Assembly: GCF_001194135.2 (NCBI RefSeq)
Contig: NC_068988.1
Span: 72,319,073 to 72,383,072, forward strand
Length of the DNA: 64,000 nt
Direction of reading: 5' to 3'
DNA from: Octopus bimaculoides
Lineage: Eukaryota
The notes under the pieces were generated by a model that worked only from the letters and a program-made list of their open reading frames with translations, had not been told where the DNA came from and made no database searches. This document shows positions 8,460 to 63,659 of this stretch, one piece after another. A program made the translations under genes and the position numbers. Each line of letters begins with the position of its first letter. Positions within the stretch are counted from its first letter, which is position 1.

Positions 8460-9612
8460 ATTGTGTTTGTCGACCGGTTTCGCTTTCGCTAATCATGACA
8501 TTAAAATAATTTTAATTACGTATTTTCTTAAGAAATGTTTTGTTTGTGCTGCCTGGGGAGTTTACGGATGAATTATACAACAAGTAGACAACTCTAAGGG
8601 GTGGTAATTGGTGATCGTTATTATTGTGGACAGGGGAGATAATTATTCTTGTATAGAAATTATAGAAATTGTATCTTTGCACTGGTAGAAGGGGAAAACT
8701 GTGAAATTTGGTTTGACGTTACCTGCACATCTCGCTATGTGTTCACTTAAAGGAATCAGTCAGTATTGCGGGAATCGTATTTGCTCTTTCTGTAGAGTGG
8801 TTCTCAGTCTCAATGTTATATTTGTCAGTCCTATATAGTTATGTTCACAACCTGAGCAGGTTACTACATAAATTAGATTCTCAGAGGCACAAGTGAAGTT
8901 GGTTTCAATTGTGAACCTCTCTCCTTGTTTGAAAAGGAAATCCGAGCCTTCAAGTAGTTTGGGGTATATTCCACAGTTTGAGCTTCCACATCTTTTAACC
9001 GTTGGTTTCGTGGTTGTTGTGTAAGACTTCGCATTTGCAAAAGTCACTTTAGCGATTTGTGTTGTCTTTTGCATTTGATAAATTTGTCTTTTAAAGATGT
9101 TGTTCATTTTTGGGTCCCTAGTTAGTAAAGGAAGATTTTGCACAATATTGATTTTATCCATCATAGTTTCTAGGGTTGTGAGTTGATATATACAGTAGTG
9201 TTTTGAGATGAAGTGTGGTGTTATGTTTTGTTGTCCTTAGTGTTTCTATGTCTAATTTCTTGGTACGCTTAATTCTATCGTCTATAAGAGAGCGTGGCTA
9301 TTATATTTCAGTTAGTGTTGTTCCGAGGTCTTAAAGACGAAGGTCCCGAGAAGCTCTATCAGACAATATTGTGCAAATCCTTGTTGCCAAATTAAAGGGG
9401 ATAATTATTTTGACGTGTTTCAAGTGGTAAGAGCTAAAAAGGAGTTATTGCTTCGAGTCCATTGGTTTCTGATAGATGTCAGTTATGATAGGATTGTAAA
9501 CTTTTTATCATAATATCCATAAGTGGGAGCTGTTCTTTGCTATATTCCATTGTGAATTGAACGTTACGGCTTATATCATTGACGAGGAACTTATAATCAA
9601 CTGCTTTGAAGC
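8460..9612 (-). mobile_element. Penelope-like element 3' part: RT thumb, GIY-YIG endonuclease and 3' terminal region
   Basis: Minus translation TDIYQKPMDSKQ.LLFSSYHLKHVKIIIPFNLATRICTI (RT thumb) and CGSSNCGIYP...FTCASENLIYVVTCSGCEHNYIGLTNITLRLR (GIY-YIG). Confidence 0.9.
8468..8500 (-). ncRNA. Minimal hammerhead-like motif at PLE 3' end (core damaged)
   Basis: TGTC-ATGA-TTA-GC-GAAA-GC-GAAA-C-CG-G-TC-GACA: stem I TGTC/GACA, GNRA-capped stem II, palindromic ACCGGT stem III, GUC site. The CTG of CUGAUGA is missing. Confidence 0.5.
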
Positions 9613-15391: not shown

Positions 15392-17086
15392 AAAGATAAT
15401 GAAAGTTCAATAAAAATATTTCCAAAACCTTTTTCAGATATCATCTGTTAATTATGAACATTAGGACTATTATGTAATTCTCAGAGCTCCCACCAGCTAG
15501 ATGTTTCATCGGTTCAGCATAAAAGGAAGGCTAGCCAGTGCCGGAAAATCTTGGAAAACCTTGGTAATTATTTAACCAGGCATTTTTCTGCTCCACCTTC
15601 TAGATCTATGGAGACGCATGAGGGAACAACGTGTCTTCAATTTAAACCGCTACCTAGTTGTATAAGAACTGGATCCGAATAGGTGTTTTACCCGAACTTC
15701 ACTTTCGGATCTATGAGTGACTCCATATCTGTGGTTGTCGTTTTCCGACTCCACCTGTTGTCATGGCACCTCAGAGTCAGTTGGTTCAGTTGGCATGCCG
15801 GCCTTAATGATATAGTCAAATATGATACGAACGCAGCTGATCTTCCATTGTAATTGGAATTCGCGGGATTAAACTGCGTTGACGTCAAAAACAACGGTAA
15901 GCATTACAATCGTTTCGAAGTAGAAAGTCCCTCATCTGAGATGCACCTTGAAGCGATACTTTTTTCAGTGGCAACCTGGTGGATAATACATGCTGCTTTT
16001 TTAGTAGGCTTCTTTCTTAAATGATGGCAGTAGAAATGTTCTGTGTACTCGTCCTCTAAACAAATTCCTACTGAGCTTGATTGCGAAACAAATGGCCACC
16101 CACATGAAGCCGCTAGGCAAATGGCCTTTTCCATGCATCTCCCTCACAACGTTTTGGTGTAATCAATTCGTTATTTTGCCTGCGGAACTTGAAGAATCTG
16201 CGTCACTCACTTCAACACATTTCTCAATAAACAATTAATAAAAGTGAGTAGCAGCTCTGTTCAGTGTGAGTCATGAGGGTTGTTGCTATTATAGGAGTGT
16301 GTTTTGTATTTTATTAGGTGTTGATCGTGTTAAGTGTGTGTTTTGTGAGTTATGTCATTTCATTGGCTGGTGATCGTGTAGGGTTTGTGCTGTGTGCAGA
16401 AGGTTAATACTGTCCGTTGTATTACTGAATTTAAAGTGTCTTGTGTATCATGAAGTCTGTATCTAGTAGAGTTATATTTTTATTAAGTGTAACGTGTGAG
16501 AAATGCTATTCATTGTTTTCTTACAAACGTGTTTTGTTTTATCTTAACTAGTGATCCAATTATTATTACCATTGTTTTATTTTCATGCACAACAACTTGC
16601 TTATTTCGATTTAAAGATTATAAGGCACTATCCTTTTAACCACTTATTAAATATGACTTGACGTCGTAGTTATTTGAATATAATACAATATTCTAATTAT
16701 ATACACTGAACCCGGAATCTGATTATCGTTATAAAAGGGTTTTAATGCCAGGCTATGTAGGTCATTGCATTTTACATGTTACACAATGGAAATATTTAAT
16801 TATAGTCCATCAGATGTAATTCAATCAGAACAAAATTCAGGCAAAATTCAAGTTACTTAAGTGGCACTTATGTACACGAGCCTATATTAACAAGAAAAGA
16901 TAAATAAAAAAAACAAAACTATTGCAACAATGCTGAAACTATTTACATATAATTATAGATTTATTCCCTGCAAGATGTAGCATCACTAAGTTTTTTTGTT
17001 GCACGCTAAAACTTGCATATTCTGAAATTTCAAAAGTTCCCAATAAAAGATACTTAAGGAAGAGTTGAAAAATATGTCATGAACGA

Positions 17087-17300
17087 CAGTCCATCGCAGC
17101 ATTGCTCAAGAAACAGGAAGAAAGAGTGAGAGAAAGTTGGGGCGAAAGAGTACAGCAGGGTTCGCCACCACCCCCTGCCGGAGCTTCGTGGAGCTTTAGG
17201 TGTTTTTGCTCAATAAACACACACAACGCCTGGTCTGGGAATCGGAACCGCGATCCTTCGACTGCGCGTCCGCTGCTCTAACCACTGGGCCATTGCGCCT
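17087..17300 (-). mobile_element. tRNA-derived SINE, type C (5' part)
   Basis: Minus strand: AGGCGCAATGGCCCAGTGGTTAGAGCAGCGG...GGTTCCGATTCCCAGACC (A/B boxes), then GTTTATTGAGCAAAAACACCTAAAGCTCCACG. Confidence 0.88.
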
Positions 17301-18999: not shown

Positions 19000-19400
19000 C
19001 TATTCTAACCAAGGAGCGGAACGTAGACAAGTTGTAGATCAAAGGTGTCATTGTGGTTTTTAGATTTAAACATTGATAGGGGGATTCTTTTTCTTACAAG
19101 TTGCATGAAAAATCCGGGTTGAACCGTGTTTTCACTTAACTCACAATATTTATATGTCATACCCAACGGAATATTTGGTATGCTGAGTGCATTTTTGAGG
19201 TCTTTAGGTACATTACGTCATTCATATTGTTGATATTCAAAATTAGATTTGCTATATTCGCTCACAGTCTTACTAACTGAGTAGATTTTGCCTTAATGGT
19301 TAGGTTTAATAAGGACGATGCATGTCCATTGCTCTTATTATTTATCGGTAAAACAATATTCACTAACAAATAGATCGAATATATTTTGGTAATTATATTA
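19000..19400 (-). mobile_element. Decayed PLE RT N-terminal fragment
   Basis: Minus frames IVLIKPNH.GKIYSV (cf. IVIKPADKG) and PGF...CKKKNPPI (cf. P.FY.LPKIHK.NPP.RPI), with frameshifts. Confidence 0.4.
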
Positions 19401-27789: not shown

Positions 27790-27987
27790 GGACGATGGTG
27801 TTGTCTAGGCGGAGGTTTGCGCTCTCTGCTTGTTGTCTACTATTATCTCATAAATGCAATAATATATTGTTGTTCTTCCTAGAATAATGTTTTCTTTACA
27901 GAGATTATATGTTTTACCTCTTTTAACTAAACATAAAAACTATGTTTTATAATGTTTAACTAATGCATTGTCAACATTTCTATTCAG

Positions 27988-28296
27988 GTCCACATCAATA
28001 TGAAACGAAAGATTAACCGTTATGTAATGCGACGCGACACAGTGAGTTTACGATCGAGCACCGGACACTATTCTTGCCATCGCCAGAATTCGGCACCAAC
28101 GCAACATGTTCAGTGTCCAACATCTGATTTAGAGGAGTCGATTCAACTACAGTTATCAGATATCATTTCACACAACCAAGATAAACAATCAGAACATTCT
28201 ACTGAACCGATGAAACAGTTCAGTATAAACTCAGACATTTCACAACTGAAATCTAACCAGCCGTGTGTTATGGCAGAAACAACGTTTACAACATAA
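27988..28296 (+). CDS. Putative terminal coding exon; resembles class B (secretin-family) GPCR helix 8 plus C-tail
   Basis: Acceptor CATTTCTATTCAG|GTC, then 102 open codons VHINMKRKINRYVMRRDTVSLRSSTGHYS...TTFTT*. Class B GPCR last exons typically start at the V of NxE|V...KR.W.R. No upstream exons found. Confidence 0.5.
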   Translation, partial: VHINMKRKINRYVMRRDTVSLRSSTGHYSCHRQNSAPTQHVQCPTSDLEESIQLQLSDIISHNQDKQSEHSTEPMKQFSINSDISQLKSNQPCVMAETTFTT

Positions 28297-34054: not shown

Positions 34055-34460
34055 AGTGGCTGTGTGGTAAGAAGATTGCTTCCTAGCCACATGGTTCCGG
34101 GCTCAGTCCTACTGCGTGGCACCTTGGGCAAGTGTCTTCTAGTATAGCCTCGGGCCGACCAAAACCTTGTGAGTGGATTTGGTAGAGGGAAACTGAAAGA
34201 AACCCGTTGTATACACATATATATACATATATACATATATATATCTGTGTATGTGTGCCTCCCCATCAGCGCTTGACAACCAGTGTTGGTGTGTTTGTGT
34301 TCCCAGAACTTAGCGGTTCGGCAAAAAAAGCGTGGGTAGAAAAAATACTAGGCTTTAAAATTAAATTAAGTCCTGGGGTCGATTTGTTCGACTAAAACCC
34401 TTCAAAGTGATACTCCAGCATGGCCGCAGTCAAATGACTAAAACAAGTAAAAAAAAAAGG
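34055..34460 (+). mobile_element. Type-B SINE, full length
   Basis: Complete head, CORE-like motif, microsatellite and tail. Confidence 0.92.
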
Positions 34461-38275: not shown

Positions 38276-39513
38276 TACGAAGTGGTATGAAACAATTCCC
38301 GGACTAGTTCTGTAGCGCGCCAACAGCTAGCACTACATAGCTGTGTGTGTAGTAAAAGCGAGCAGTGACCTTCGTGAGGCAGTGTGCCGAGTGACATTAC
38401 TGTGTTTACTTCGCAAGTTGTGAAATTCGTGTTTTGGGGATCATGTGTATGCTATATATAGTATGAGATTTTGTCATGGACAGAAAGCTGGAACAAGGAG
38501 CCAACGTGAAATTTTGTGTTAAACTTGGGAAGTCTTCTACAAAGACATTGAGCATGCTTCGGCAAGCTTACGGAGACGAGGCAATAGGCCGTACGCAATG
38601 TTTTTGAGTAGCACTAGGGCTCCAAAAGCGGAAGAACATCCCTGAAAGACGATGAGCGATCTGGCAGATCTGCCACGAGCGTCACTCCCGGAAATCTGGT
38701 GAAAATATATCATCTTGTGCATGAAGATCGTCGGAAGACAATCAGTGACCTTGCTGATGTTGTTGATTTATCGTATGGGTCCGTGCAGGCAATCCTAATG
38801 TATGAAATGAACAAGTGACGTGTTTCTGCCAAGCTTGCCTTCTGCCCGCTGACCACTGATCAGAAAGAACATCGCATCGAAGTTTGTCAAGATCTCCATC
38901 AGCGTGCCACTGATGACTCGTCCTTCATGTCCAGGATCATCACCGGTGATGAGAGCTGGGTCTGCGGGTAAGACCCTGAGAAGAAGCAGCAGTCGTCACA
39001 ATGAAAGAGTCCTTCATCTCCACGACAGAAGTTGCAGTTCAATCAAGAGCATGTTCATCGTTTTTATCGACATCCGCGGTATTGTGCATCGAGAATTCGT
39101 CCCCCAAGGCAAAGCTGTCAATCAAGAGTTCCACTGCGACGTTTTGAAGCGTTTGAGAGAGGAAATTCGGCGAAAGCAACCGGATCTACTGAGCCAAAAG
39201 AATTGGATTCTTCACGACGAAAATGCACCCTGTCACCGAGCTCTCCTCACAAAACAACATGGTATCACTTTCGCACCTGCCCTATTCGCTAGATTTAACA
39301 CCGTTATCGAGATGAAGAGCGAATCATAGAAGGTCCTCGACTCGCTTACAGAAACCAACTTCCAGGCCGGGTCCCGAAAGTGGCAGAAACATTGGGACTG
39401 ATATATTGCTGCGCAAGGTTACTATTTCAATGGATGTTATGTTAAAACTTAGGTAAATAAGTTATTTTTTGTTAAACATAACTAATCCTGGAACTTTTAG
39501 ATACCACTTCTTA
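38276..39513 (+). mobile_element. Full-length decayed mariner (DD34D) transposon
   Basis: TIRs TACGAAGTGGTATGAAACAATTCCCGGACTAGTT and its inverted counterpart at ~39480-39513. Transposase pseudo-ORF MDRKLEQGANVKFCVKLGKS...ITGDESWV..DPE.KQQSSQ...FIDIRGIVHREFVPQG..VNQEF...WILHDENAPCH, with stops and frameshifts. Confidence 0.95.
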
Positions 39514-41759: not shown

Positions 41760-41900
41760 TTACAGTTTTGAAGAGCATTCACCGCCGATACTTTTGTATT
41801 GAACTCCTTCATGCGATGTCTGGCGTCTGGTTCTTCGTTTGATACTTTCTCTCTTGATAACATGGATTTCGCGTTGCATTTTCGTGACACAGCAACGATA
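41760..41900 (-). CDS. Integrin alpha-like gene, terminal exon (cytoplasmic tail)
   Basis: Acceptor CTTTTTTCTACTCGCCAG|TAT, phase 0 matching the TM exon; 46 codons YRCCVTKMQREIHVIKRESIKRRTRRQTSHEGVQYKSIGGECSSKL*. Best candidate exon downstream of the TM exon. Confidence 0.65.
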   Translation of the reverse strand, partial: YRCCVTKMQREIHVIKRESIKRRTRRQTSHEGVQYKSIGGECSSKL

Positions 41901-42092
41901 CTGGCGAGTAGAAAAAAGATGCAGTTTAAATGTTCAGTATGAAAGAGCTCAATCGAAACTAAAAATAATACATGGTTATCATACAATGAGTGATTTAAGA
42001 TGCAATGAAACAATCTCAGTAAATACTTGAAATCAAACAAATGAATAAACCATAGTTGAAGCTACGGCATTAAATATATACATACGTACGCG

Positions 42093-42153
<61 letters not shown>

Positions 42154-42191
42154 CTATACAAGTAGATAGATAGATAGATAGATAGATAGAT

Positions 42192-42575
42192 GGTGGCACT
42201 CTGTCGGTTGCGACGACGAGGTTTCCAGTTGATCCTAGCAACCGAACAGCCTGCTTGTGAAATTAACGTGCAAGTGGCTGAGCACTCTATAGACACATGT
42301 ACCCTTAATGTAGTTAGTTCTCAGGGAGATTCATCGTGACACAGAGTGTGACAAGGCTAGCCCTTTGAAATACAGGTACAACAGAAACAGGAAGAGGGAA
42401 AGAGGGAAAGTTGTGGTGAAAAAGTACAGCAGGGTTCGCCACCACCCCTGCCGGAGTCTCGTGGAGCTTTAGTTGTTTTCACTCAATAAACACTTACAAC
42501 GCCCGGTCTGGGAATCGAAACCGCGATCCTACGACCGCGAGTCTGCTGCCCTAATCACTGGACCATTGCGTCACC
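42192..42575 (-). mobile_element. Type-C SINE, full length
   Basis: tRNA-like head at ~42575-42505; tail ending GGAAACCTCGTCGTCGCAACCGACAGAGTGCCA followed by (ATCT)n. Confidence 0.92.
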
Positions 42576-42577
42576 AC

Positions 42578-42621
<44 letters not shown>

Positions 42622-43181
42622 CATACATACATACATACATACATGCATATATATATATATATATATACAGGCATAAGTATATGCATACATATGTATATAT
42701 ATACACACAGATATATATGTATATATATATATTTATATCTATAAATCTCTCTCCCTCTCTCTCTCCCTCTCTCTCTCACTGGATATATATATATATANNN
42801 NNNNNNNNNNNNNNNNNNNNNNNNNNNNNNNNNNNNNNNNNNNNNNNNNNNNNNNNNNNNNNNNNNNNNNNNNNNNNNNNNNNNNNNNNNNNNNNNNNNN
42901 NNNNNNNNNNNNNNNNNNNNNNNNNNNNNNNNNNNNNNNNNNNNNNNNNNNNNNNNNNNNNNTAGCGATGGAAGAATTAATCACAAAAGGTAATTTTTAT
43001 ATCCAACTTGGCTACTGTGTTAGAACACCGAATACTGCGATACTAGCATTGAAAGATCCTCTTATATAGGCGCTTGGTGCATGAAAGCACACACATAGAT
43101 CGTGGCAGACGAAGCTAGATATAATGATTACCTTTTGGTATTAATACTGTTTCCATCACAAATAATTAATTTTTAATAAGC

Positions 43182-43223
<42 letters not shown>

Positions 43224-43314
43224 CCAAAAAGAAGAACAAACACAAAAAAAAACATCAACGCGAGGACGTGGTACATGTAAAGTATTAGCAGACGCTGAGG
43301 GAAGGAAAGAAAGA

Positions 43315-43352
43315 TGGTGTAACGTTTCGAGCGGACGCTCTTCTTCGGAAAC
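43315..43352 (-). ncRNA. Degenerate minimal hammerhead-like motif
   Basis: Minus strand: TGTTT-CCGAAGA-A-GAGC-GTCC-GCTC-GAAA-CGTTAC. 4-bp stem II and palindromic AACGTT; U4 replaced by C. Confidence 0.4.
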
Positions 43353-43437
43353 AGGGGCAAGTTCAAAAGAAGAGAAGACAGAGGAAGAATATTGCCAACG
43401 ATTCACATGTGGTTACATGGTTATATATATAAGAAGA

Positions 43438-43827
43438 ATGTGGAAAGAGAAAAAATAGGCAGCTTTGAACAATACGGAAAATTCAATAAAACATATATTT
43501 TGGGCTCAAATCTTATCTTTAGAAGAACAGTCAAAGAAAAGTTCAGTCGTGTTGGATCCGTTATTCTATTTAATCTCTCCAACGTTTATGCAACAGCACC
43601 AGACAGTTACTCGCTCTCCAAACGTTTGGAGAGTGAGAGAGCGACTGCTGCTGTTACATAAACGCTGGAAAGTTCAATTAAAGTAATGGATCCTACACAA
43701 CTGGACTGTTCTTCGTTTGTTCTTCTCTTCTAAAGATGAGACTTTCAGCCCGAAGTATATTAAGGTTTTATTAAACTTCTTGCATTGTTAGAAGCTGTTT
43801 ATTTTCTCTTTCCACATGCTTCAAACG
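43438..43827. repeat. ~390-bp spacerless imperfect palindrome
   Basis: Centre CTCTCCAAAC|GTTTGGAGAG at 43623/43624; arms align out to ATGTGGAAAGAGAAAA (43438) and TTTTCTCTTTCCACAT (43827). Confidence 0.9.
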
Positions 43828-45889
43828 AATTACGACGATCATATAGAAATGGATATTAATAAACAGTCGACAACTGATGAGCGAGTTATCTTCATTTGGT
43901 GTTTTGTCCTGTACTTAATGTGTATTATATATATATATATATATTGCCTTCCGTTAACCCTTGCAATAGTGAGGAATATCTATTTCAGATAATTTTTCTT
44001 ATCATAATCATTCGCTATATAATCCTACAAACACATATTGGCCGGTTTATGAATGACTGACCACATGATATAGCAAATAAATAGTTTACATTCCCTCAGT
44101 TCTAGTCATAAATTGTAACCTTGTAAAACTACTAAATTAACCAATCAAGTGTATATTGTTATTGCTCTTCTGGGTAAATGAAAATCTTTCCATTCTGCGA
44201 TTTTCACTTTCTAAAATATCATTTAAGGAAATTATAGATTCTACTTATTTTTATATCTATCCGTGATCTAACAGTATTAATGAGAAAAGGATAACCTCGC
44301 TTCTAAAGAAGCTTTGATTCTTTGAAGTTAAAAATCCGTAATTTGAACATATCTCTACCTGTAGGTCATTCTCTGATTCAAAGAATATAATCACATCAGC
44401 GAATATAAATGAGCGTCTCAGGGGCAGACCTTACATTATAACTTTACTGATTGCACAAAATTGACATTTTTGTAAGTCAGGATAAAATTCACTGGGAATA
44501 TATGACGAAGTATGGCCATTTTATTTTATTTATTTATCTCGAAGTGGATTTTTATATCGAGTGCGATTTAAACATATGATTGGCTATATAAATAAATTCT
44601 GTGTGAAATTAGTTACTTTTTTAATACATTAATAATGTATCGTTTCTTTGAGGTTTAAACGTCAATCACACAGATAGAAATGTGTTTGCTCGTCCTAACT
44701 GTAAACCTAATGACTGAAATATCGTTTATTATACTTCATTAACAAAGTAAGATCAATAAGAATGAATTCCAGTTATAATTAAAATTTAACTTTACAACTA
44801 ATTTTAACTCATTTGAAAACTTTTTATAATGTTTCATGAGATACTTCTTTCCTCAATAACATACTTACTTTCCAAACTAATTCTAAATATTTCTGTTCAA
44901 AATATTGTGATTCTCTCTTCTTGATCGCTTTCATACAGAAACATAGCAGGAATGAGGGGGAGGGGAGAGGGGGGAGGGACTTTTGCAATAATGAAGTTTG
45001 TTATTGTTGAGAGAGAAATATATATTAAGAGAGAGGGGAATAGGGAGAGNNNNNNNNNNNNNNNNNNNNNNNNNNNNNNNNNNNNNNNNNNNNNNNNNNN
45101 NNNNNNNNNNNNNNNNNNNNNNNNNNNNNNNNNNNNNNNNNNNNNNNNNNNNNNNNNNNNNNNNNNNNNNNNNNNNNNNNNNNNNNNNNNNNNNNNNNNN
45201 NNNNNNNNNNNNNNNNNNNNNNNNNNNNNNNNNNNNNNNNNNNNNNNNNNNNNNNNNNNNNNNNNNNNNNNNNNNNNNNNNNNNNNNNNNNNNNNNNNNN
45301 NNNNNNNNNNNNNNNNNNNNNNNNNNNNNNNNNNNNNNNNNNNNNNNNNNNNNNNNNNNNNNNNNNNNNNNNNNNNNNNNNNNNNNNNNNNNNNNNNNNN
45401 NNNNNNNNNNNNNNNNNNNNNNNNNNNNNNNNNNNNNNNNNNNNNNNNNNNNNNNNNNNNNNNNNNNNNNNNNNNNNNNNNNNNNNNNNNNNNNNNNNNN
45501 NNNNNNNNNNNNNNNNNNNNNNNNNNNNNNNNNNNNNNNNNNNNNNNNNNNNNNNNNNNNNNNNNNNNNNNNNNNNNNNNNNNNNNNNNNNGAGAGGGAG
45601 AGAGAGGGAGAGAGAGGGGAGAGGGAGAGAGAGTGTGTGTGTGAATGATAGATAGGTAGACAGAGTATTGTCACCATAGTAACTAACGAGACTTTCACTA
45701 TACAACAGTCTGCTGCTAACTAGCTGTACAATACGAGGCACATTACAGATAGTTTCAGTAATAACGGTCGTATAATTGTTACGCACTGTCAGCCAGAGTA
45801 CATAAGGCGAGAGGTCCGCCACATAGTTTTGTAGTTTTTTGGTCATGTGATTTTGTAGATTTTTGGTCATGTGATTGATGAGCATCGCA

Positions 45890-46590
45890 GAATTACTCGT
45901 ATGGAAGAAGTAAAGCAGTGCCAGAATGCAAAAAGACAGGGAATAAATGGAGCAGAAAGGAAGAACGAGAGATAGATTAATGTAGCTCGATAAAGACAAG
46001 CACAAGGATAACTTTCTCAAGAACATCGACATGTTTTGGCATGAGAAGCTGGGCAGCATAATGCAGCACAACAGTTTCTTTCTCAAGAAGAACTAGAAGA
46101 AACTGGTACGAGATGCTGAACAGCGTATGACAGCGAAAGAACAATAGTCTCGAGAACAGCGTGAACATATTTTAGAAGGTAACGCTGCGCAACACCGTCA
46201 TGTACACCAAAGGCTTTCTCAGGAAGACAACTAATCCTAAATAATCGAGAAAACCTCTGTTTTGTCGATTATTTCAGCGATACTACTAAAGCTCGGCCGC
46301 ACGACTCATTCCGCTTCAAGTTCCCCATTCCGATAGCATCAACTTCAACGTGTCTCGCCTAATAATGCAACTGGAGTCTTTTATACGATGCTCAGCCGTT
46401 GGTGTGAAATGAAGCCCCAATGTGCCACCGACATCTTCTTGAAACTTTAAATCATACACTTCAGGGTATCGTGAACAATGAGCCACAGCTTGAAGGAAAA
46501 TTATTGGGTCTTGGTGAAAATTTTCGACAAATTCTTCTTGTAGTTTTCAAAATCATTCGATGTTCTCTAATGCATAAAAAGCACTGTGTG
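45890..46590 (+). mobile_element. Helitron fragments (N-terminal charged repeats joined to PIF1 motifs)
   Basis: Repeats of ...SQEE/EQR..., then GRTTHS.F...STSTC and EAPMCHRHLLETLNHTLQGI..N...EGKLL.LGENFRQILLVV (PIF1 WDEAPM and GDFRQ motifs). Confidence 0.85.
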
Positions 46591-47544
46591 CCATCACGTT
46601 GGGCCTTTTAAATATAGATACAGTCCAGTCAGTGGATTTCCACAAGCTTCTGACTACCCATTTTCACTCTCAATGGTTCGGTTAACTCGATGTTATTGTA
46701 GAATACACAAACCCAAGCTACCATGCTGTAGATTAGAACTTGGAATCTCATAACTACAATGTGAGCTTTTAACGGTTTAACTGAGAAACGTTTTCCACTT
46801 TGCAGGGTATAATTAAATTTTGTAAAGAGTAATGACTGTGATAGATTAGTGTTTTATCTAAGGTGTATTACCTTGAAAGCTCACATAAAGTCTAATATAT
46901 TGCAATTGCTACGTAAGACACTATAAGAGGACTTACTTGAATATCTCATTAAAATTCGGTTTAAATTACGTTTAAAAAACATCATTTCAACGTAGGAAAG
47001 TTGTTTTATAAATTAAAAACACATTGATATTCATTCACTTTTATTTCTGTATTTCGGAATGGTCATTTTTTTTCTTTGCTAAATTATCATTTTATAGTAT
47101 TAATATATATTATAGAGAATCAAAATGTTCGTCGTACATCTGTAACCTGGTGACAGATATTTCACCAAATCTGTTAAGTTGTAAACCTAACACCGTTCAG
47201 TTATCTGCAGTTTACTGGTAACTTAAATTTATTCCATCCTGGGTATGAGGTAGGTGAATCTCAAAAAATAATCAATCGGTTGTATAGCTCGTTTTTCGTA
47301 TATTAATACTTGAAAGAGATTATATTATGTGTACCATCGTTAATTAAACAGTGATGAAATAGCTATGTGTACCATCGTTATATAACAGTGATGAAATAGC
47401 TTAATTATGACAGAAGTTGAAATATATAACACAGAATAAGTATGTAGCTGAAAAACGTTCCTGTCTTTCAAGATATGCATTTGGAAAATTTATACAAAGA
47501 GTTAAAATTAATGGTACAAATCAAACAATGATAGATTCACTTAC

Positions 47545-47667
47545 TTTCCATATAAGAAACCACAAAAACATTATACAACAAAAGGCTCCAGCTGCACTGG
47601 CTACAGCCACCCATATATAGTTGATAGGTTTTCCGGATATCATGTCTGCCAAGAAAGACAGCTGAAC
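47545..47667 (-). CDS. Integrin alpha-like gene, transmembrane exon
   Basis: TTTTCAG|GTT...TGG AAA|GTAAGT, 123 nt, phase 0/0: VQLSFLADMISGKPINYIWVAVASAAGAFCCIMFLWFLIWK, typical of the integrin alpha W....S...G.........LWK TM segment. Confidence 0.9.
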
Positions 47668-50439: not shown

Positions 50440-50990
50440 ACTAATGTAAACATGGTTTAATGATGTAAGTCCAGTTACAAACGATAACTTACTCTTATTG
50501 AATGAATTCTCTTCCAAGGAGCCAAATATGTGTTTGCTTCGTTAATTATCTCCATGTCTATTGCGATTTGAAGGTAATCAAGAATCTAAAATAGAACATA
50601 TTAAACATCAAATGATGTGAACTTGAACGTGTAAATTATTTCAAATACCTAGGATCATAGGTAGAAAGCTCAAAACGACACTGTGAAGTAGTAATTGAAT
50701 TAGTATGGTCAGCAACAAACAAGATGTGTATAGTGTGGAGTCAGATCTGTTTACATCAAAATGCAACATTTGAATAATGCTAACCCAAGTTTCTGGAACA
50801 CTTCGAGATACTGCTGGAAAATAAAAGACAAAGGTCAACTATTACTGTAGCACCAGTATATGGTAAAAAAAAATAATAAGCAGATTTGTCGAACATAAGT
50901 GCCGCAATTGCTGAGGGGACACAAATCTTGAAAGAAACTGTACTGCAGAGATGATTGAGAACAAGAAACACGATATGATTTCTAGTATTG
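50440..50990 (+). mobile_element. RTE-like LINE reverse transcriptase fragment
   Basis: ERVNYFKYLGS*VESSKRH...LVWSATNKMCIVWS...RFVEHKCR matches the RTE pattern FKYLGS.I.SS...LAW.A.NKL..IW.S...R.FAGH..R. Confidence 0.8.
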
Positions 50991-52324: not shown

Positions 52325-52441
52325 CTTAAAAACGTCATGTGCGTTTGAAAAATTCAGATGAAGGCTTAAAATAATTTGTTTGTAGGCAGCAATTTCTGGA
52401 ACTTTACAACGCACCATTAAACATGTAGCAAATTGGCAACC
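52325..52441 (-). CDS. Integrin alpha-like gene, calf-2 exon with C-x4-C-x4-C motif
   Basis: TTTCTATTTTCTAG|GGT...AAG|GTACAA, 117 nt, phase 0/0: GCQFATCLMVRCKVPEIAAYKQIILSLHLNFSNAHDVFK. Confidence 0.9.
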
Positions 52442-53953: not shown

Positions 53954-54310
53954 GTGTGTGCACTATGTCCCCACTTCGACAAAACCACTGGCACTGATAG
54001 GAACTGTGTGGTATGTTCCTTTAATGCCTGTATTAACTATGAAACCAGGAACTCGGTCTACAGCATAAAGTGCATAGAGGGAGATTGTAAGAACAAGAAT
54101 ATAGCATATAATGGGGAGACTTTGATGAGTTTAGCAAAAAGGCTATATGAACATACTGGCGTGAGGATAATGACAGGAAACAATCGTCTATACTTTACCA
54201 GGATACCAGAGATCAACATGGCGACATGTTGGGCCAAATTGATATCCATATTTTGTTTAAATACCCAAGAGATCCGTCGCTTAGACGAATACGTGAGAAT
54301 CTCCTCATAA
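53954..54310 (+). mobile_element. PLE GIY-YIG endonuclease fragment
   Basis: CALCPHF...CINYETRNSVYSIKCIEGDCKNKNIAYNGETLMSLAKRLYEH. Confidence 0.88.
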
Positions 54311-58701: not shown

Positions 58702-58884
58702 TGTAACCGCCTGTTTGGTGACAAGGATATTTCTTTGGACATTAGCAATGGATTCTTTATTAAGATTTTCAGCTCGTAAAGTAGAAACTTCTTTCTGTGT
58801 TGTGGTTAAAAGTGAAATGGTTGGGTTGGTTCCATTATCTTCTGATTTGATATCACACTCTAAGCTGATATTCTCTCTGGTTAC
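58702..58884 (-). CDS. Integrin alpha-like gene, calf-2 flexible-loop exon
   Basis: TTTGACAG|GTA...ACA|GTAAGA, 183 nt, phase 0/0: VTRENISLECDIKSEDNGTNPTISLLTTTQKEVSTLRAENLNKESIANVQRNILVTKQAVT. Confidence 0.88.
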
Positions 58885-59325: not shown

Positions 59326-60751
59326 CTTATTCATGAGTATTTTACAGCGCACATGGCCCTCTCTTATATCATTCGTAATATGTGAGTTTAGATGTTAGTC
59401 TTTCAACTAACTTGTTTCCACAGGAAGGTTTGAATTCACAGCTCTGCAATCTTGCCAAGCACTCGTTAATTTCACAGTGACACCTCTGCTTTCAGCATTG
59501 GTCAGTAGTATTTGTTGTTTCCCATCAAATCTATATGAACTGGGTCGCAGAAAGCTAAGTGTTTTGGTCATAAACACTAAGCATTCTTGGTCATAGGAGA
59601 CAAAGTGTCAACCTCTTGACTTCAACCGGCTACAATATTGAACACTACAGACATATAAATAGTTAACAATTGACAAAAATTTCTGAGCATTTTATTATTT
59701 CAAAACTGTAGGATTGAATCTAAAATGAAGAATTCCAGATATATGCTTTAACATAATGTAACATTTCTATATGTTGTAAATCAACATTCAGAATCATATT
59801 TCTATAAGACCCTGAAACCATAACACTGTGCTGCAAGTCATAAAATATATTTTCAAATCTCCCCAACACATCACTACTTAATCATTAAAAAGACATACGT
59901 CTCTTAAAATAATTAAATTATTTAATGTTCTCTAAAAACATGCCCTAGGAGCTTCCTCATGAATCATTACTTGATTCGAGTACAGATTAGATTGATCTCC
60001 TGATCTTTGTTTTGGCTCACGTGAAAATGTGAACGAGAAACCGAATCATTTGAAACTTTCATTAGCTAGCAAGAGTTCTAATTATATCAGATGTATGATA
60101 AATATCCTCACATCTAATATACATACCCATCGTACCATTTTATAATTAGTGAGAATGAAGCATTGAAAGTAAAATGTTTTTTGCCAGAGACTGAATGCAG
60201 GAGTGATAATAACCAAGCAATGAATCTTGAGAGTTTATTTCTTTCTTGTTTTTCTTTTTCAAAAAATAATTTGTAACATGATACATTCGCATATATATCA
60301 TGCCATATAATCGTAATGTATATTATGTATATATATATATATATATATATATAGTGTACGCTATAGCATACTATATTCCCATGGAGATCAACAGTAAATT
60401 TTATATTATATACTCAAATGCAAACATATATTAATATATTATAGTACTATATACTGAAGTACACCTCTGTAATATTATGTTATAACATCTCTGCAGTATT
60501 ACATTATAACATTATATACTCACTGGTATGAAACGTTTACTATGCGTCTTTCATTTTGGGCTGAGTCAGGTACGAATGAGTCATTTCACAAGATTCATTC
60601 GTACCTGTGATTTTTCAACCGAGATCAATTGACTGGAGAAGAATACATTCAGCTCAGTTAATTTGCCGCTTTATACGGATATTAAAGCTTCTGGAATGAC
60701 ACAAATCTATCGAAGTTAATAGACTTCTTTCATTTAACATTCCTATATACT

Positions 60752-61010
60752 GGCACCTCGTCAGTTACGACGATGGAGGTTCCAGTTGATCCGATCAACA
60801 GAACAGCTTGCTCGTGAAATTAACGTGCGTGTGGCTGAGTACTCCACAAACGTAGTTCTCTGGGATATTCAGCGTGACACAGAGCGTGACAAGACCGGTC
60901 CTGTCAAATACAGATACGACTCAATTTTACCAGCTGAGTGGACTAGAGCTACGTGAAATAAAGTGCTCAAGGACACAACGCAGCGCCGGGAATTCACTCA
61001 TGACCTTTGT
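60752..61010 (-). mobile_element. Type-D SINE (V-domain-like)
   Basis: TGGCAC...GTTACGACGATGGAGGTTCCAGTTGATCCGATCAAC...GTGAAATAAAGTGCTCAAGGACACAACGC..CCGGGAATT. Confidence 0.85.
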
Positions 61011-61756: not shown

Positions 61757-61952
61757 ATGTATATCTGTATAAGTAAAAAGCATGTTTCCACCAGGAACAG
61801 TCATTGGGATCCTAAACACGGCAGTCGTTTCTGGAAGATAACTCGGTCCCAAATTATGGATTATGAAGTCAGTGGCCATTACAAATGAATCAGAGTTATT
61901 GATAGATAATTGATCTTCCTTGTTATATTTCACTGGTGTAGATGCTGTTTTC
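61757..61952 (-). CDS. Integrin alpha-like gene, calf-2 N-terminal exon (NxGPS motif)
   Basis: TCTCATCAACAG|G...CAT|GTGAGT, 196 nt, phase 2/0: KTASTPVKYNKEDQ...DFIIHNLGPSYLPETTAVFRIPMTVPGGNMLFTYTDIH. NLGPS is the conserved integrin alpha motif. Confidence 0.92.
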
Positions 61953-63179: not shown

Positions 63180-63410
63180 TAAGTCGTGGGGTCGATTTAT
63201 TCGACTAAAACCCTTCGAGGTGGTGCTTCAACACGGCCGCAGTCAAATGACTGATACAAGTAAAAGAATAAAAGAATAAAAGAATATATATGCTATCTTT
63301 ATGTTAGTTAAAATATGTTTGTGACATATTTCAACTTCAGTTACCGTCCGTTGATCGGATCAACTGGAACCCTCGACGTCGTAAGTGACGGAGTGCCAAC
63401 AACAACAGTA
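63180..63410 (+). mobile_element. Type-B SINE tail followed by a type-C/D SINE tail fragment
   Basis: GGGGTCGATTTATTCGACTAAAACCCTTC...GGCCGCAGTCAAATGACTG; then CGTTGATCGGATCAACTGGAACCCTCGACGTCGTAAGTGACGGAGTGCCA. Confidence 0.85.
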
Positions 63411-63659
63411 AGATGGTATAAAAATAAAATATTTATCCAATGCTGCCCTCTGTAGAATTCCCAGACGCGTTTCTAGTTCATTAGCCGCTATTAATGGGAA
63501 GTACCTGGACAGACTTTATTAAAGAGGCAACTCTGGACAGACTTAATTAAAGCCGTAGCTTCAACTAGAACACAGTCAACAACATCGACTCGTGTGAGCC
63601 ATTCGATCGCCAGGTCTGAAAATTTTTTGTGTGCGCGCGTGCGCGCGTGAGTGTTTTGA

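What the first reader, a model, noticed from the sequence alone, without database searches (positions are those of the whole stretch)
41760..47667. Integrin alpha-like protein whose tail lacks the GFFKR motif
The TM exon ends ...FLIWK at a canonical phase-0 donor, exactly where integrin alphas continue with xGFFKR. I found no xGFFKR exon downstream. The best acceptor-supported exon gives YRCCVTKMQREIHVIKRESIKRRTRRQTS...: a juxtamembrane Cys pair (possible palmitoylation; there is also CC within the TM), a basic stretch and PKA-type sites (KRES, RRQTS). GFFKR is known to clamp the beta subunit in the inactive state, so its loss would imply constitutive activation, altered beta pairing or a new signalling tail. 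This may be a divergent cephalopod/mollusc integrin alpha class.
Basis: partly seen in the sequence, partly recalled or inferred. Interest (0 to 1): 0.7.

Follow-up and report, generated by a model that had tools for sequence, protein, structure and literature searches.

The report
Octopus integrin alpha without GFFKR motif
The window holds the last six exons of an Octopus bimaculoides integrin alpha gene. Where almost all integrin alphas carry the GFFKR "off-switch" motif, this one has a different sequence (YRCCVTK...), which is strongly conserved in four octopod species.

Summary
On the minus strand, the TM exon (47667-47545, ...FLIWK|GTAAGT) splices in phase 0 to a terminal exon (41900-41760) that encodes YRCCVTKMQREIHVIKRESIKRRTRRQTSHEGVQYKSIGGECSSKL*.

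- **Existing models:** The same junction is in public models of this locus (UniProt A0A0L8FQQ8; RefSeq XP_052826125.1 "integrin alpha-9"). It is also in O. sinensis, O. vulgaris and Argonauta hians.
- **Assembly gaps:** Both gaps lie in the intron. The gap-free orthologous introns (651 bp in Argonauta, 6674 bp in O. sinensis) contain no GFF-type exon.
- **Selection:** Between Octopus and Argonauta the tail exon has 13 synonymous and 1 non-synonymous codon changes. 14 of 15 nucleotide differences are at third codon positions.
- **Conservation:** TM plus tail is the most conserved part of the protein (95% versus 70% overall).
- **Relatives:** Other mollusc and echinoderm relatives keep WK-CGFF[KR]R. 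Mytilus has the same phase-0 intron in front of CGFFKR.

This is a real integrin alpha of loosely alpha4/alpha9 type in which the motif was replaced in place. The two Cys occupy the positions of the two Phe.

The functional readings are inference: an altered inner-membrane clasp, a palmitoylated Cys pair, and PKA sites. The splice itself was not checked against RNA reads. I rate it a new variant of a known kind, of moderate interest.

The parts
61757..61952 (-). Calf-2 exon (x)KTASTPVKYNKEDQLSINNSDSFVMATDFIIHNLGPSYLPETTAVFRIPMTVPGGNMLFTYTDIH, followed by donor GTGAGT
   Evidence: Together with the next exon it hits Pfam PF20806 Integrin_A_Ig_3 at E=3e-6. It is 83% nt identical to Argonauta.
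58702..58884 (-). Calf-2 exon VTRENISLECDIK...VTKQAVT, phase 0 at both ends
   Evidence: It is part of gene model P0001/P0123.
52325..52441 (-). Calf-2 exon GCQFATCLMVRCKVPEIAAYKQIILSLHLNFSNAHDVFK (the conserved Cys cluster of calf-2)
   Evidence: Acceptor tttctag|, donor |gtacaa. Conserved in Argonauta.
50493..50585 (-). Exon ILDYLQIAIDMEIINEANTYLAPWKRIHSIR
   Evidence: Conserved in Argonauta at 79% nt.
47545..47667 (-). Transmembrane exon VQLSFLADMISGKPINYIWVAVASAAGAFCCIMFLWFLIWK. It has a small-xxx-small motif (A..G at W+4 and W+8) and ends WK at a phase-0 GTAAGT donor.
   Evidence: Versus Argonauta: 21 synonymous and 2 non-synonymous codon changes.
41901..47544 (-). Intron of 5644 bp between the TM exon and the tail exon. 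It holds both assembly gaps, microsatellites and a SINE-like insert.
   Evidence: Collinear with the gap-free O. sinensis intron. The orthologous Argonauta intron is only 651 bp.
45050..45591 (.). Assembly gap (542 N) flanked by (CT)n-like low-complexity sequence
   Evidence: Its flanks lie about 29 bp apart in O. sinensis.
42798..42962 (.). Assembly gap (165 N) next to (TA)n and (GA)n runs
   Evidence: The O. sinensis counterpart is microsatellite plus a palindromic repeat with no coding potential.
42200..42560 (.). SINE-like repeat inserted in the intron; not part of the gene's function
   Evidence: No counterpart turned up in the blastn comparisons with the O. sinensis and Argonauta introns. 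ARAGORN finds no tRNA.
41760..41900 (-). Terminal coding exon: cytoplasmic tail YRCCVTKMQREIHVIKRESIKRRTRRQTSHEGVQYKSIGGECSSKL plus the TAA stop. It replaces the canonical xGFFKR exon at the same intron position.
   Evidence: Identical in O. sinensis and O. vulgaris; 37 of 38 residues identical in Argonauta. dN 0.011 versus dS 1.3. No PF00357 hit, while control tails do hit.

Best explanation
This is the 3' end of a functional Octopus bimaculoides integrin alpha-subunit gene (RefSeq name "integrin alpha-9"). It has no I-domain and is only loosely of alpha4/alpha9 type.

**Shown:** The ectodomain, the TM helix with its small-xxx-small packing motif, and the phase-0 intron after "WK" are canonical. 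The cytoplasmic exon at the usual position reads YRCCVT-KMQRE... instead of CGFF[KR]R-K[KQ]RE..., and this version has been held almost unchanged since Octopus and Argonauta diverged.

**Inferred:**
- The exon is most likely the same exon diverged in place. C>Y, G>R, F>C and F>C are each single-base changes, and the downstream K-x-QRE is retained.
- The canonical inner-membrane clasp with the beta subunit (the two Phe packing against the beta TM, and the Arg salt bridge) cannot form as in other integrins. Resting-state control must therefore work differently.
- My preferred version is that the Cys pair, which sits exactly where the two Phe sit, is S-acylated and dips into the membrane in their place.
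- The conserved basic stretch with KRES and RRQT(S) sites could give phosphorylation control.
For: - **Integrin alpha identity:** Pfam Integrin_A_Ig_3 on the window's exons. FG-GAP x3 plus Integrin_A_Ig_1/2/3 on the full-length orthologues, with no VWA domain.
- **Same junction in five models from four species**.
- **Splice sites** are conserved in Argonauta and O. sinensis.
- **Gap-free orthologous introns** have no GFF-type exon.
- **No conserved block** lies between the tail exon and the next gene.
- **Purifying selection in this frame:** tail 13 synonymous / 1 non-synonymous codon, differences by codon position 0/1/14, dN 0.011, dS 1.3. TM exon 21 synonymous / 2 non-synonymous.
- **TM plus tail** is 95% identical versus 70% overall, and holds the best-conserved 40-residue window of the protein.
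- **Same intron position** before CGFFKR in Mytilus.
- **Motif survey:** PF00357 hits the Mytilus, Bradybaena and Patiria tails but not the octopod tails. 77 of the homologues retrieved carry GFFxx, and apart from evident read-through isoform models and two single-substitution variants (FDFFKR, CSFFKR), the octopod proteins are the only full-length TM-bearing ones without it.
- **Background:** Disrupting GFFKR gives default high affinity (PMC2119979). Membrane-proximal Cys of alpha3, alpha6 and alpha7 are palmitoylation sites (PMC2172609).
Against: - No RNA reads were inspected here. The splice rests on gene models plus conservation.
- No beta subunit was examined, so pairing and any compensating change are unknown.
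- Palmitoylation and phosphorylation are motif-level guesses.
- In-place divergence, as opposed to exon replacement, rests on weak similarity: K-x-QRE, and 5 of 6 positions reachable by one base change, which is roughly p=0.04 by chance.
- The alpha4/alpha9 assignment is weak: 26-28% identity to the best non-cephalopod hits, and an unresolved NJ tree.
Confidence: 0.85

Rival explanations
1. Assembly or annotation artefact: the true GFFKR exon is hidden in one of the two N gaps, and the YRCC exon is a mis-called ORF.
For: The intron does hold 707 unread bases. A 46-codon ORF alone is not significant in 33% GC DNA.
Against: - The gap-free O. sinensis and Argonauta introns have no GFF motif in any frame.
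- The flanks of the large gap are about 29 bp apart in O. sinensis.
- The YRCC exon shows a 0/1/14 codon-position pattern of divergence.
Confidence: 0.02
2. Alternative 3' exons, as in vertebrate alpha3, alpha6 and alpha7: a second, canonical GFFKR tail exon exists elsewhere, and the YRCC tail is only one isoform.
For: Alternative cytoplasmic exons are known in some vertebrate alphas (PMC2172609 mentions the alpha3A/B and alpha6A/B forms).
Against: - No GFF[KR]R is found on the gene's strand anywhere in the readable window. The same holds for 6 kb downstream in Argonauta and 3 kb downstream in O. sinensis.
- Only repeats are conserved between the tail exon and the neighbouring GPCR gene.
Confidence: 0.04
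3. Decaying or non-functional duplicate: a pseudogene or a gene losing its signalling function, so the lost motif has no functional meaning.
For: - The branch is long, with only 26-28% identity to non-cephalopod alphas.
- The public models are fragmented.
Against: - Full-length open reading frames of 1008-1024 aa exist in O. vulgaris and Argonauta.
- Synonymous sites are near saturation while dN is about 0.01-0.02 in the TM and tail exons.
- The tail is the most conserved segment of the protein.
- The fragmentation coincides with assembly gaps and with a split model.
Confidence: 0.03
4. A real gene, but the protein no longer works as a regulated alpha/beta integrin. It could be a constitutively active adhesion receptor or a beta-independent receptor, and the tail could be conserved for an unrelated partner.
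For: - GFFKR disruption gives default high affinity in alphaIIb-beta3.
- No canonical Arg or Phe is left at the clasp positions.
Against: - The ectodomain architecture is retained, and so are the outer-membrane small-xxx-small motif and the WK boundary.
- Strong constraint on exactly the membrane-proximal residues suggests that an interaction at the membrane interface is maintained.
Confidence: 0.2

Closest known systems
Canonical invertebrate alpha4/alpha9-like (PS3-type) integrin alphas, e.g. Mytilus edulis "integrin alpha-4-like" (P0030), Bradybaena (P0011), Patiria "alpha-9-like" (P0008)
   Same: - FG-GAP propeller, three Ig-like domains and no I-domain.
- TM helix ending in WK.
- Phase-0 intron directly after WK.
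- They are the best non-cephalopod hits.
   Different: They continue with CGFF[KR]R-K[KQ]RE and hit Pfam PF00357. The octopod protein reads YRCCVT-KMQRE and does not. Overall identity is only 26-28%.
Engineered GFFKR deletion or substitution mutants of alphaIIb (O'Toole et al. 1994, PMC2119979)
   Same: The clasp motif is absent from the alpha tail.
   Different: Those are laboratory mutants with default high affinity. Here the replacement is natural and fixed, and is itself under strong purifying selection, so it probably does something rather than nothing.
Palmitoylated integrin alphas alpha3, alpha6 and alpha7 (Yang et al. 2004, PMC2172609)
   Same: Membrane-proximal cysteine(s) at the cytoplasmic face of the alpha TM.
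   Different: There it is a single membrane-proximal Cys, which by my own recollection sits directly in front of an intact GFFKR. Here it is a Cys pair in place of the two Phe, plus a second pair inside the TM. Acylation was not tested here.
Human integrin alpha4 tail (paxillin binding regulated by PKA phosphorylation; from my own knowledge, not tested here)
   Same: Basic tail with PKA-type sites. The pentapeptide QYKSI occurs in both, which may be coincidence.
   Different: In alpha4, QYKSI follows GFFKR directly. In the octopod tail it lies 33 residues in, and no GFFKR exists.

Membership tests
Integrin alpha subunit | N-terminal FG-GAP beta-propeller repeats | tested here: met
   PF01839 x3 on P0124 and P0004 (E about 1e-17). 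This part of the gene lies outside the window; the window's model P0001 carries it.
Integrin alpha subunit | Thigh, calf-1 and calf-2 Ig-like domains | tested here: met
   PF08441, PF20805 and PF20806 are above the curated cut-offs. PF20806 also hits the window's own exons (27.3 bits against a cut-off of 23.6).
Integrin alpha subunit | Single C-terminal TM helix with a small-xxx-small motif, ending W-K | tested here: met
   Read directly: IWVAVASAAGAFCCIMFLWFLIWK, with A at W+4, G at W+8 and K at W+22, the same spacing as in Mytilus.
Integrin alpha subunit | Phase-0 intron between the TM "WK" and the cytoplasmic exon | tested here: met
   Window 47545|47544 and 41901|41900. Mytilus L005 42269|42270 and 44783|44784.
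Integrin alpha subunit | Membrane-proximal GFFKR-type motif (Pfam PF00357) | tested here: not met
   No motif in the window, the introns or the proteins. No PF00357 hit at E<=10, while three control tails hit.
Integrin alpha subunit | Forms a heterodimer with an integrin beta subunit | not testable with these tools
alpha4/alpha9 (PS3-type) subgroup | Groups with alpha4/alpha9 in a phylogeny | tested here: inconclusive
   The best non-cephalopod hits are named alpha-4-like or alpha-9-like at 26-28% identity. The NJ tree is star-like, with 38% support for the nearest grouping.
alpha4/alpha9 (PS3-type) subgroup | No inserted I (VWA) domain | tested here: met
   No PF00092 among the Pfam hits of P0124 or P0004.

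The most novel reading that the evidence does not exclude
Octopods have replaced the universal GFFKR clasp of one integrin alpha by a di-cysteine lipid anchor. Reversible S-acylation of the CC pair, which sits in the FF register, together with PKA-type phosphorylation of the adjoining basic stretch, would set the resting/active balance. That would be an acylation-switched inner-membrane clasp not known in any integrin.
Probability: 0.15. Interest if true: 0.7.

Novelty: new variant of a known kind. Interest (0 to 1): 0.45.

Why it matters
GFFKR is treated as the invariant alpha-side half of the integrin inner-membrane clasp. Among the homologues collected here, every other full-length TM-bearing one, apart from evident read-through isoform models, has a GFF-type or near-GFF motif.

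A natural alpha subunit that lost the motif, yet keeps the replacement under the strongest constraint in the whole protein, is a ready-made experiment. It can show which features of the clasp are dispensable and what can substitute for them.

It also corrects the impression that this tail might be an assembly artefact, and it flags fragmented public models of the gene. It does not open a new field: the gene models are already public and the ectodomain is ordinary.

Tried and rejected
- **Wrong exon guess.** I first took an ORF at about 49240-49132 (-) (SIACYTKSIREEFSSRSDVVITWSLVYDSLTWK) for a calf-2 exon. It has in-frame stops upstream and no Pfam hit. It is in no gene model and is not conserved in Argonauta. 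The real exons are at 52441-52325 and 50585-50493.
- **Word-indexed protein searches.** C-terminal-only queries returned nothing, not even the locus's own protein. That is a limit of the word index, not evidence of absence. The full HMMER representative search and the full-length query found the relatives.
- **PDB sequence search** with the C-terminal exons found nothing useful.
- **GFF look-alikes.** PGFFMQ at 19115 (-), MMFFKRN at 46979 (-), and FFFKRD at L001 44769 have no AG acceptor and are not conserved. GFFQFPSTK at 34204 and 37005 is a dispersed repeat.
- **NJ tree** to place the gene: unresolved.
- **L004.** This ENA contig has a 49%-identical calf-2 exon and was a hoped-for more distant orthologue or paralogue. 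Its TM and tail are not within the 10 kb obtainable.
- **Literature.** No paper in the library names these accessions or a natural GFFKR-less cephalopod integrin.
- **Not attempted.** I did not run a structure prediction of the TM-tail. A single-chain model would not test the alpha/beta clasp.
Full report
**What is in the window**

The gene lies on the minus strand. Reading 48000-41500 shows an exon 47667-47545. It follows the acceptor ttttcag| and encodes VQLSFLADMISGKPINYIWVAVASAAGAFCCIMFLWFLIWK, with a GTAAGT donor after it.

5644 bp downstream there is a strong acceptor (tcttttttctactcgccag|) at 41901/41900. It opens the frame YRCCVTKMQREIHVIKRESIKRRTRRQTSHEGVQYKSIGGECSSKL, which ends at the TAA at 41762-41760.

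A six-frame motif scan found no GFF[KR]R or close variant on the minus strand anywhere in the readable window.

**Is it an integrin alpha?**

Two upstream exons (61952-61757 and 58884-58702) hit Pfam Integrin_A_Ig_3 (calf-2) above the curated cut-off (E=3e-6). An exhaustive HMMER search with the concatenated exons returned P0001. This is UniProt A0A0L8FQQ8, an "uncharacterized protein" of Octopus bimaculoides, and it is the gene model of this very locus.

The model gave the two exons I had missed (52441-52325 and 50585-50493) and showed that my own guess at about 49240 was wrong. Its C-terminus is exactly ...FLIWK-YRCCVTKMQ...SSKL. All six exons in the window join in phase 0, apart from the 5' end of the first.

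**Relatives**

A search with P0001 and a cluster look-up gave these proteins:
- XP_052826125.1, "integrin alpha-9" (O. bimaculoides, newer assembly).
- XP_029639827.1 plus XP_029639828.1 (O. sinensis; the gene is split into two models).
- CAI9727384.1, "integrin alpha-9-like" (O. vulgaris, 1008 aa).
- GAB1609914.1 (Argonauta hians, 1024 aa, 75% identical).

Every model that reaches the C-terminus has the same TM-to-YRCC junction. The tail is identical in the three Octopus species and 37 of 38 residues identical in Argonauta, up to ...VQYKSI. After that point it diverges.

The full-length orthologues have FG-GAP x3 and Integrin_A_Ig_1/2/3 and no VWA domain.

**The gaps**

L003 (the newer O. bimaculoides assembly) is base-for-base identical to the window over this region, gaps included, so it adds nothing. 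Two other species have gap-free loci.

- **Argonauta (L001):** The TM exon ends at 43135 with GTAAGT, and the tail exon starts at 43787 after ttttgttttacttattag|. The intron is 651 bp and has no GFF-type motif in any frame.
- **O. sinensis (L002):** The intron is 6674 bp, collinear with the window's intron, and has no such motif.
- **542-N gap:** Its flanks (45592 and 45049) align to O. sinensis positions about 29 bp apart, so the gap sits in a (CT)n-like expansion.
- **165-N gap:** The region around it corresponds to microsatellites and a palindromic repeat.

Between the tail exon and the next gene, only dispersed repeats are shared between Argonauta and Octopus. The next gene is a secretin-type GPCR lying tail-to-tail with the integrin gene in Argonauta; a 273-bp match in the window suggests the same neighbour there. 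A hidden or alternative GFFKR exon is therefore very unlikely.

**Is the tail exon translated in this frame?**

| Exon (Octopus vs Argonauta) | Codons compared | Identical | Synonymous | Non-synonymous | Differences by codon position (1/2/3) | dN | dS |
|---|---|---|---|---|---|---|---|
| Tail, first 38 codons | 38 | 24 | 13 | 1 (R>H) | 0/1/14 | 0.011 | 1.3 |
| TM exon | 41 | 18 | 21 | 2 | 3/1/20 | 0.021 | saturated |

Fourteen of 15 differences at third positions has a binomial probability of about 2e-6 under no constraint.

At the protein level, TM plus tail is 95% identical against 70% for the whole protein. The single best-conserved 40-residue window of the protein spans the inner half of the TM and the membrane-proximal tail. 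This rules out a spurious ORF and a pseudogene.

**Comparison with canonical alphas**

- Mytilus, Bradybaena, Sinanodonta and Patiria relatives read WK/WW-CGFF[KR]R-[KQM]K/QRE.
- Among all proteins retrieved, 77 carry GFFxx near the C-terminus. Those without it are bacterial FG-GAP proteins, truncated or read-through isoform models, two single-substitution variants (FDFFKR, CSFFKR), one long-tailed protein (Bradybaena) whose GFFRR lies further upstream, and the octopod proteins.
- Pfam PF00357 (integrin alpha cytoplasmic region) hits the three control tails directly after WK, but not the two octopod tails even at E<=10.
- In Mytilus the intron sits exactly between ...CTATGGAAG|GTGGGT and TTTTACAG|TGTGGCTTTTTCAAACGG. 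This is the same position and phase as in the window.

In ungapped register the two versions line up as follows:

| Position after W-K | 1 | 2 | 3 | 4 | 5 | 6 |
|---|---|---|---|---|---|---|
| Canonical | C | G | F | F | K/R | R |
| Octopod | Y | R | C | C | V | T |

The Cys pair falls on the two Phe. C>Y, G>R and both F>C are single-base changes, and the following K-x-QRE resembles K-[KQ]-RE. I read this, with moderate confidence, as the ancestral exon diverged in place.

**Mechanism**

*Shown:* This is a conserved, selected integrin alpha with a canonical ectodomain and outer TM motif, and a non-canonical membrane-proximal tail.

*Established background:* Disrupting GFFKR in alphaIIb gives default, energy-independent high affinity, so the motif maintains the low-affinity state (PMC2119979). 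Membrane-proximal cysteines of alpha3, alpha6 and alpha7 are palmitoylation sites (PMC2172609).

*Inferred:*
- The canonical clasp cannot form.
- Because the replacement is the most constrained part of the protein, it probably provides an alternative membrane-interface interaction.
- My preferred version is S-acylated CC in place of FF.
- The conserved KRES and RRQT(S) sites in a basic stretch are possible phosphorylation controls.

None of this was testable here, and no beta subunit could be examined.

**Placement and novelty**

The best non-cephalopod hits are alpha-4-like or alpha-9-like at 26-28% identity. A quick NJ tree is unresolved, so the subgroup is only tentative.

No paper in the searchable library names these accessions or describes a natural GFFKR-less cephalopod integrin. 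The gene models themselves are public.

I rate it a new variant of a known kind, with moderate interest. What remains open is the RNA-level proof of the junction, the age of the change (octopods or all coleoids) and the biochemical meaning.

Noticed in passing
window 38467-39326 (+): Remnant of a mariner-type transposase (Pfam Transposase_1, E=4e-8), lying in the intergenic stretch downstream of the integrin gene.
   Followed up: partly
window 42200-42560; similar copies near 60738-60953, 63340-63432 and 17080-17277: SINE-like repeat with a tRNA-like head, inserted in the TM-to-tail intron. No counterpart turned up in the blastn comparisons with the O. sinensis and Argonauta introns. ARAGORN calls no tRNA.
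   Followed up: partly
window 27968-28240; L001 50175-53939 (-): In Argonauta the 3' neighbour is a secretin-type GPCR (HRM + 7tm_2) lying tail-to-tail with the integrin gene. A 273-bp stretch at the near end of that gene matches the window at 71% nt, which suggests the neighbour is conserved. The window ORF over the match gave no Pfam hit.
   Followed up: partly
L002 1-716 and 3001-26574; L003; proteins P0005, P0125, P0123, P0001: The public models of this gene are fragmented. O. sinensis RefSeq splits it into a 569-aa and a 416-aa protein. XP_052826125.1 lacks about 100 residues present in O. vulgaris and Argonauta. A0A0L8FQQ8 lacks the N-terminal third. L003 has many assembly gaps, which probably account for the O. 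bimaculoides truncations.
   Followed up: partly
L005 (Mytilus edulis) about 42300-43800: The intron after the Mytilus TM exon holds about ten degenerate tandem copies of the exon end plus donor (translated as ...VGLWK-VGMF...).
   Followed up: no
L004 9998-10190 (ENA ERZ21867824, contig ctg116964l): A contig from an assembly filed as a metagenome carries a 49%-identical copy of the calf-2 exon, among retrotransposon ORFs. It is probably cephalopod host DNA. Whether it is an orthologue or a paralogue is unknown, and its tail is out of reach.
   Followed up: partly
window 8763-9236 (-) and 53954-54307 (+): Two Cys-rich ORFs of 158 and 118 aa that look by eye like GIY-YIG-type mobile-element nuclease remnants. 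Neither has a Pfam hit.
   Followed up: partly
octopod tail, residues 34-38 (window about 41801-41787, -): The pentapeptide QYKSI is, from memory, also the sequence that directly follows GFFKR in human integrin alpha4. It may be chance.
   Followed up: no
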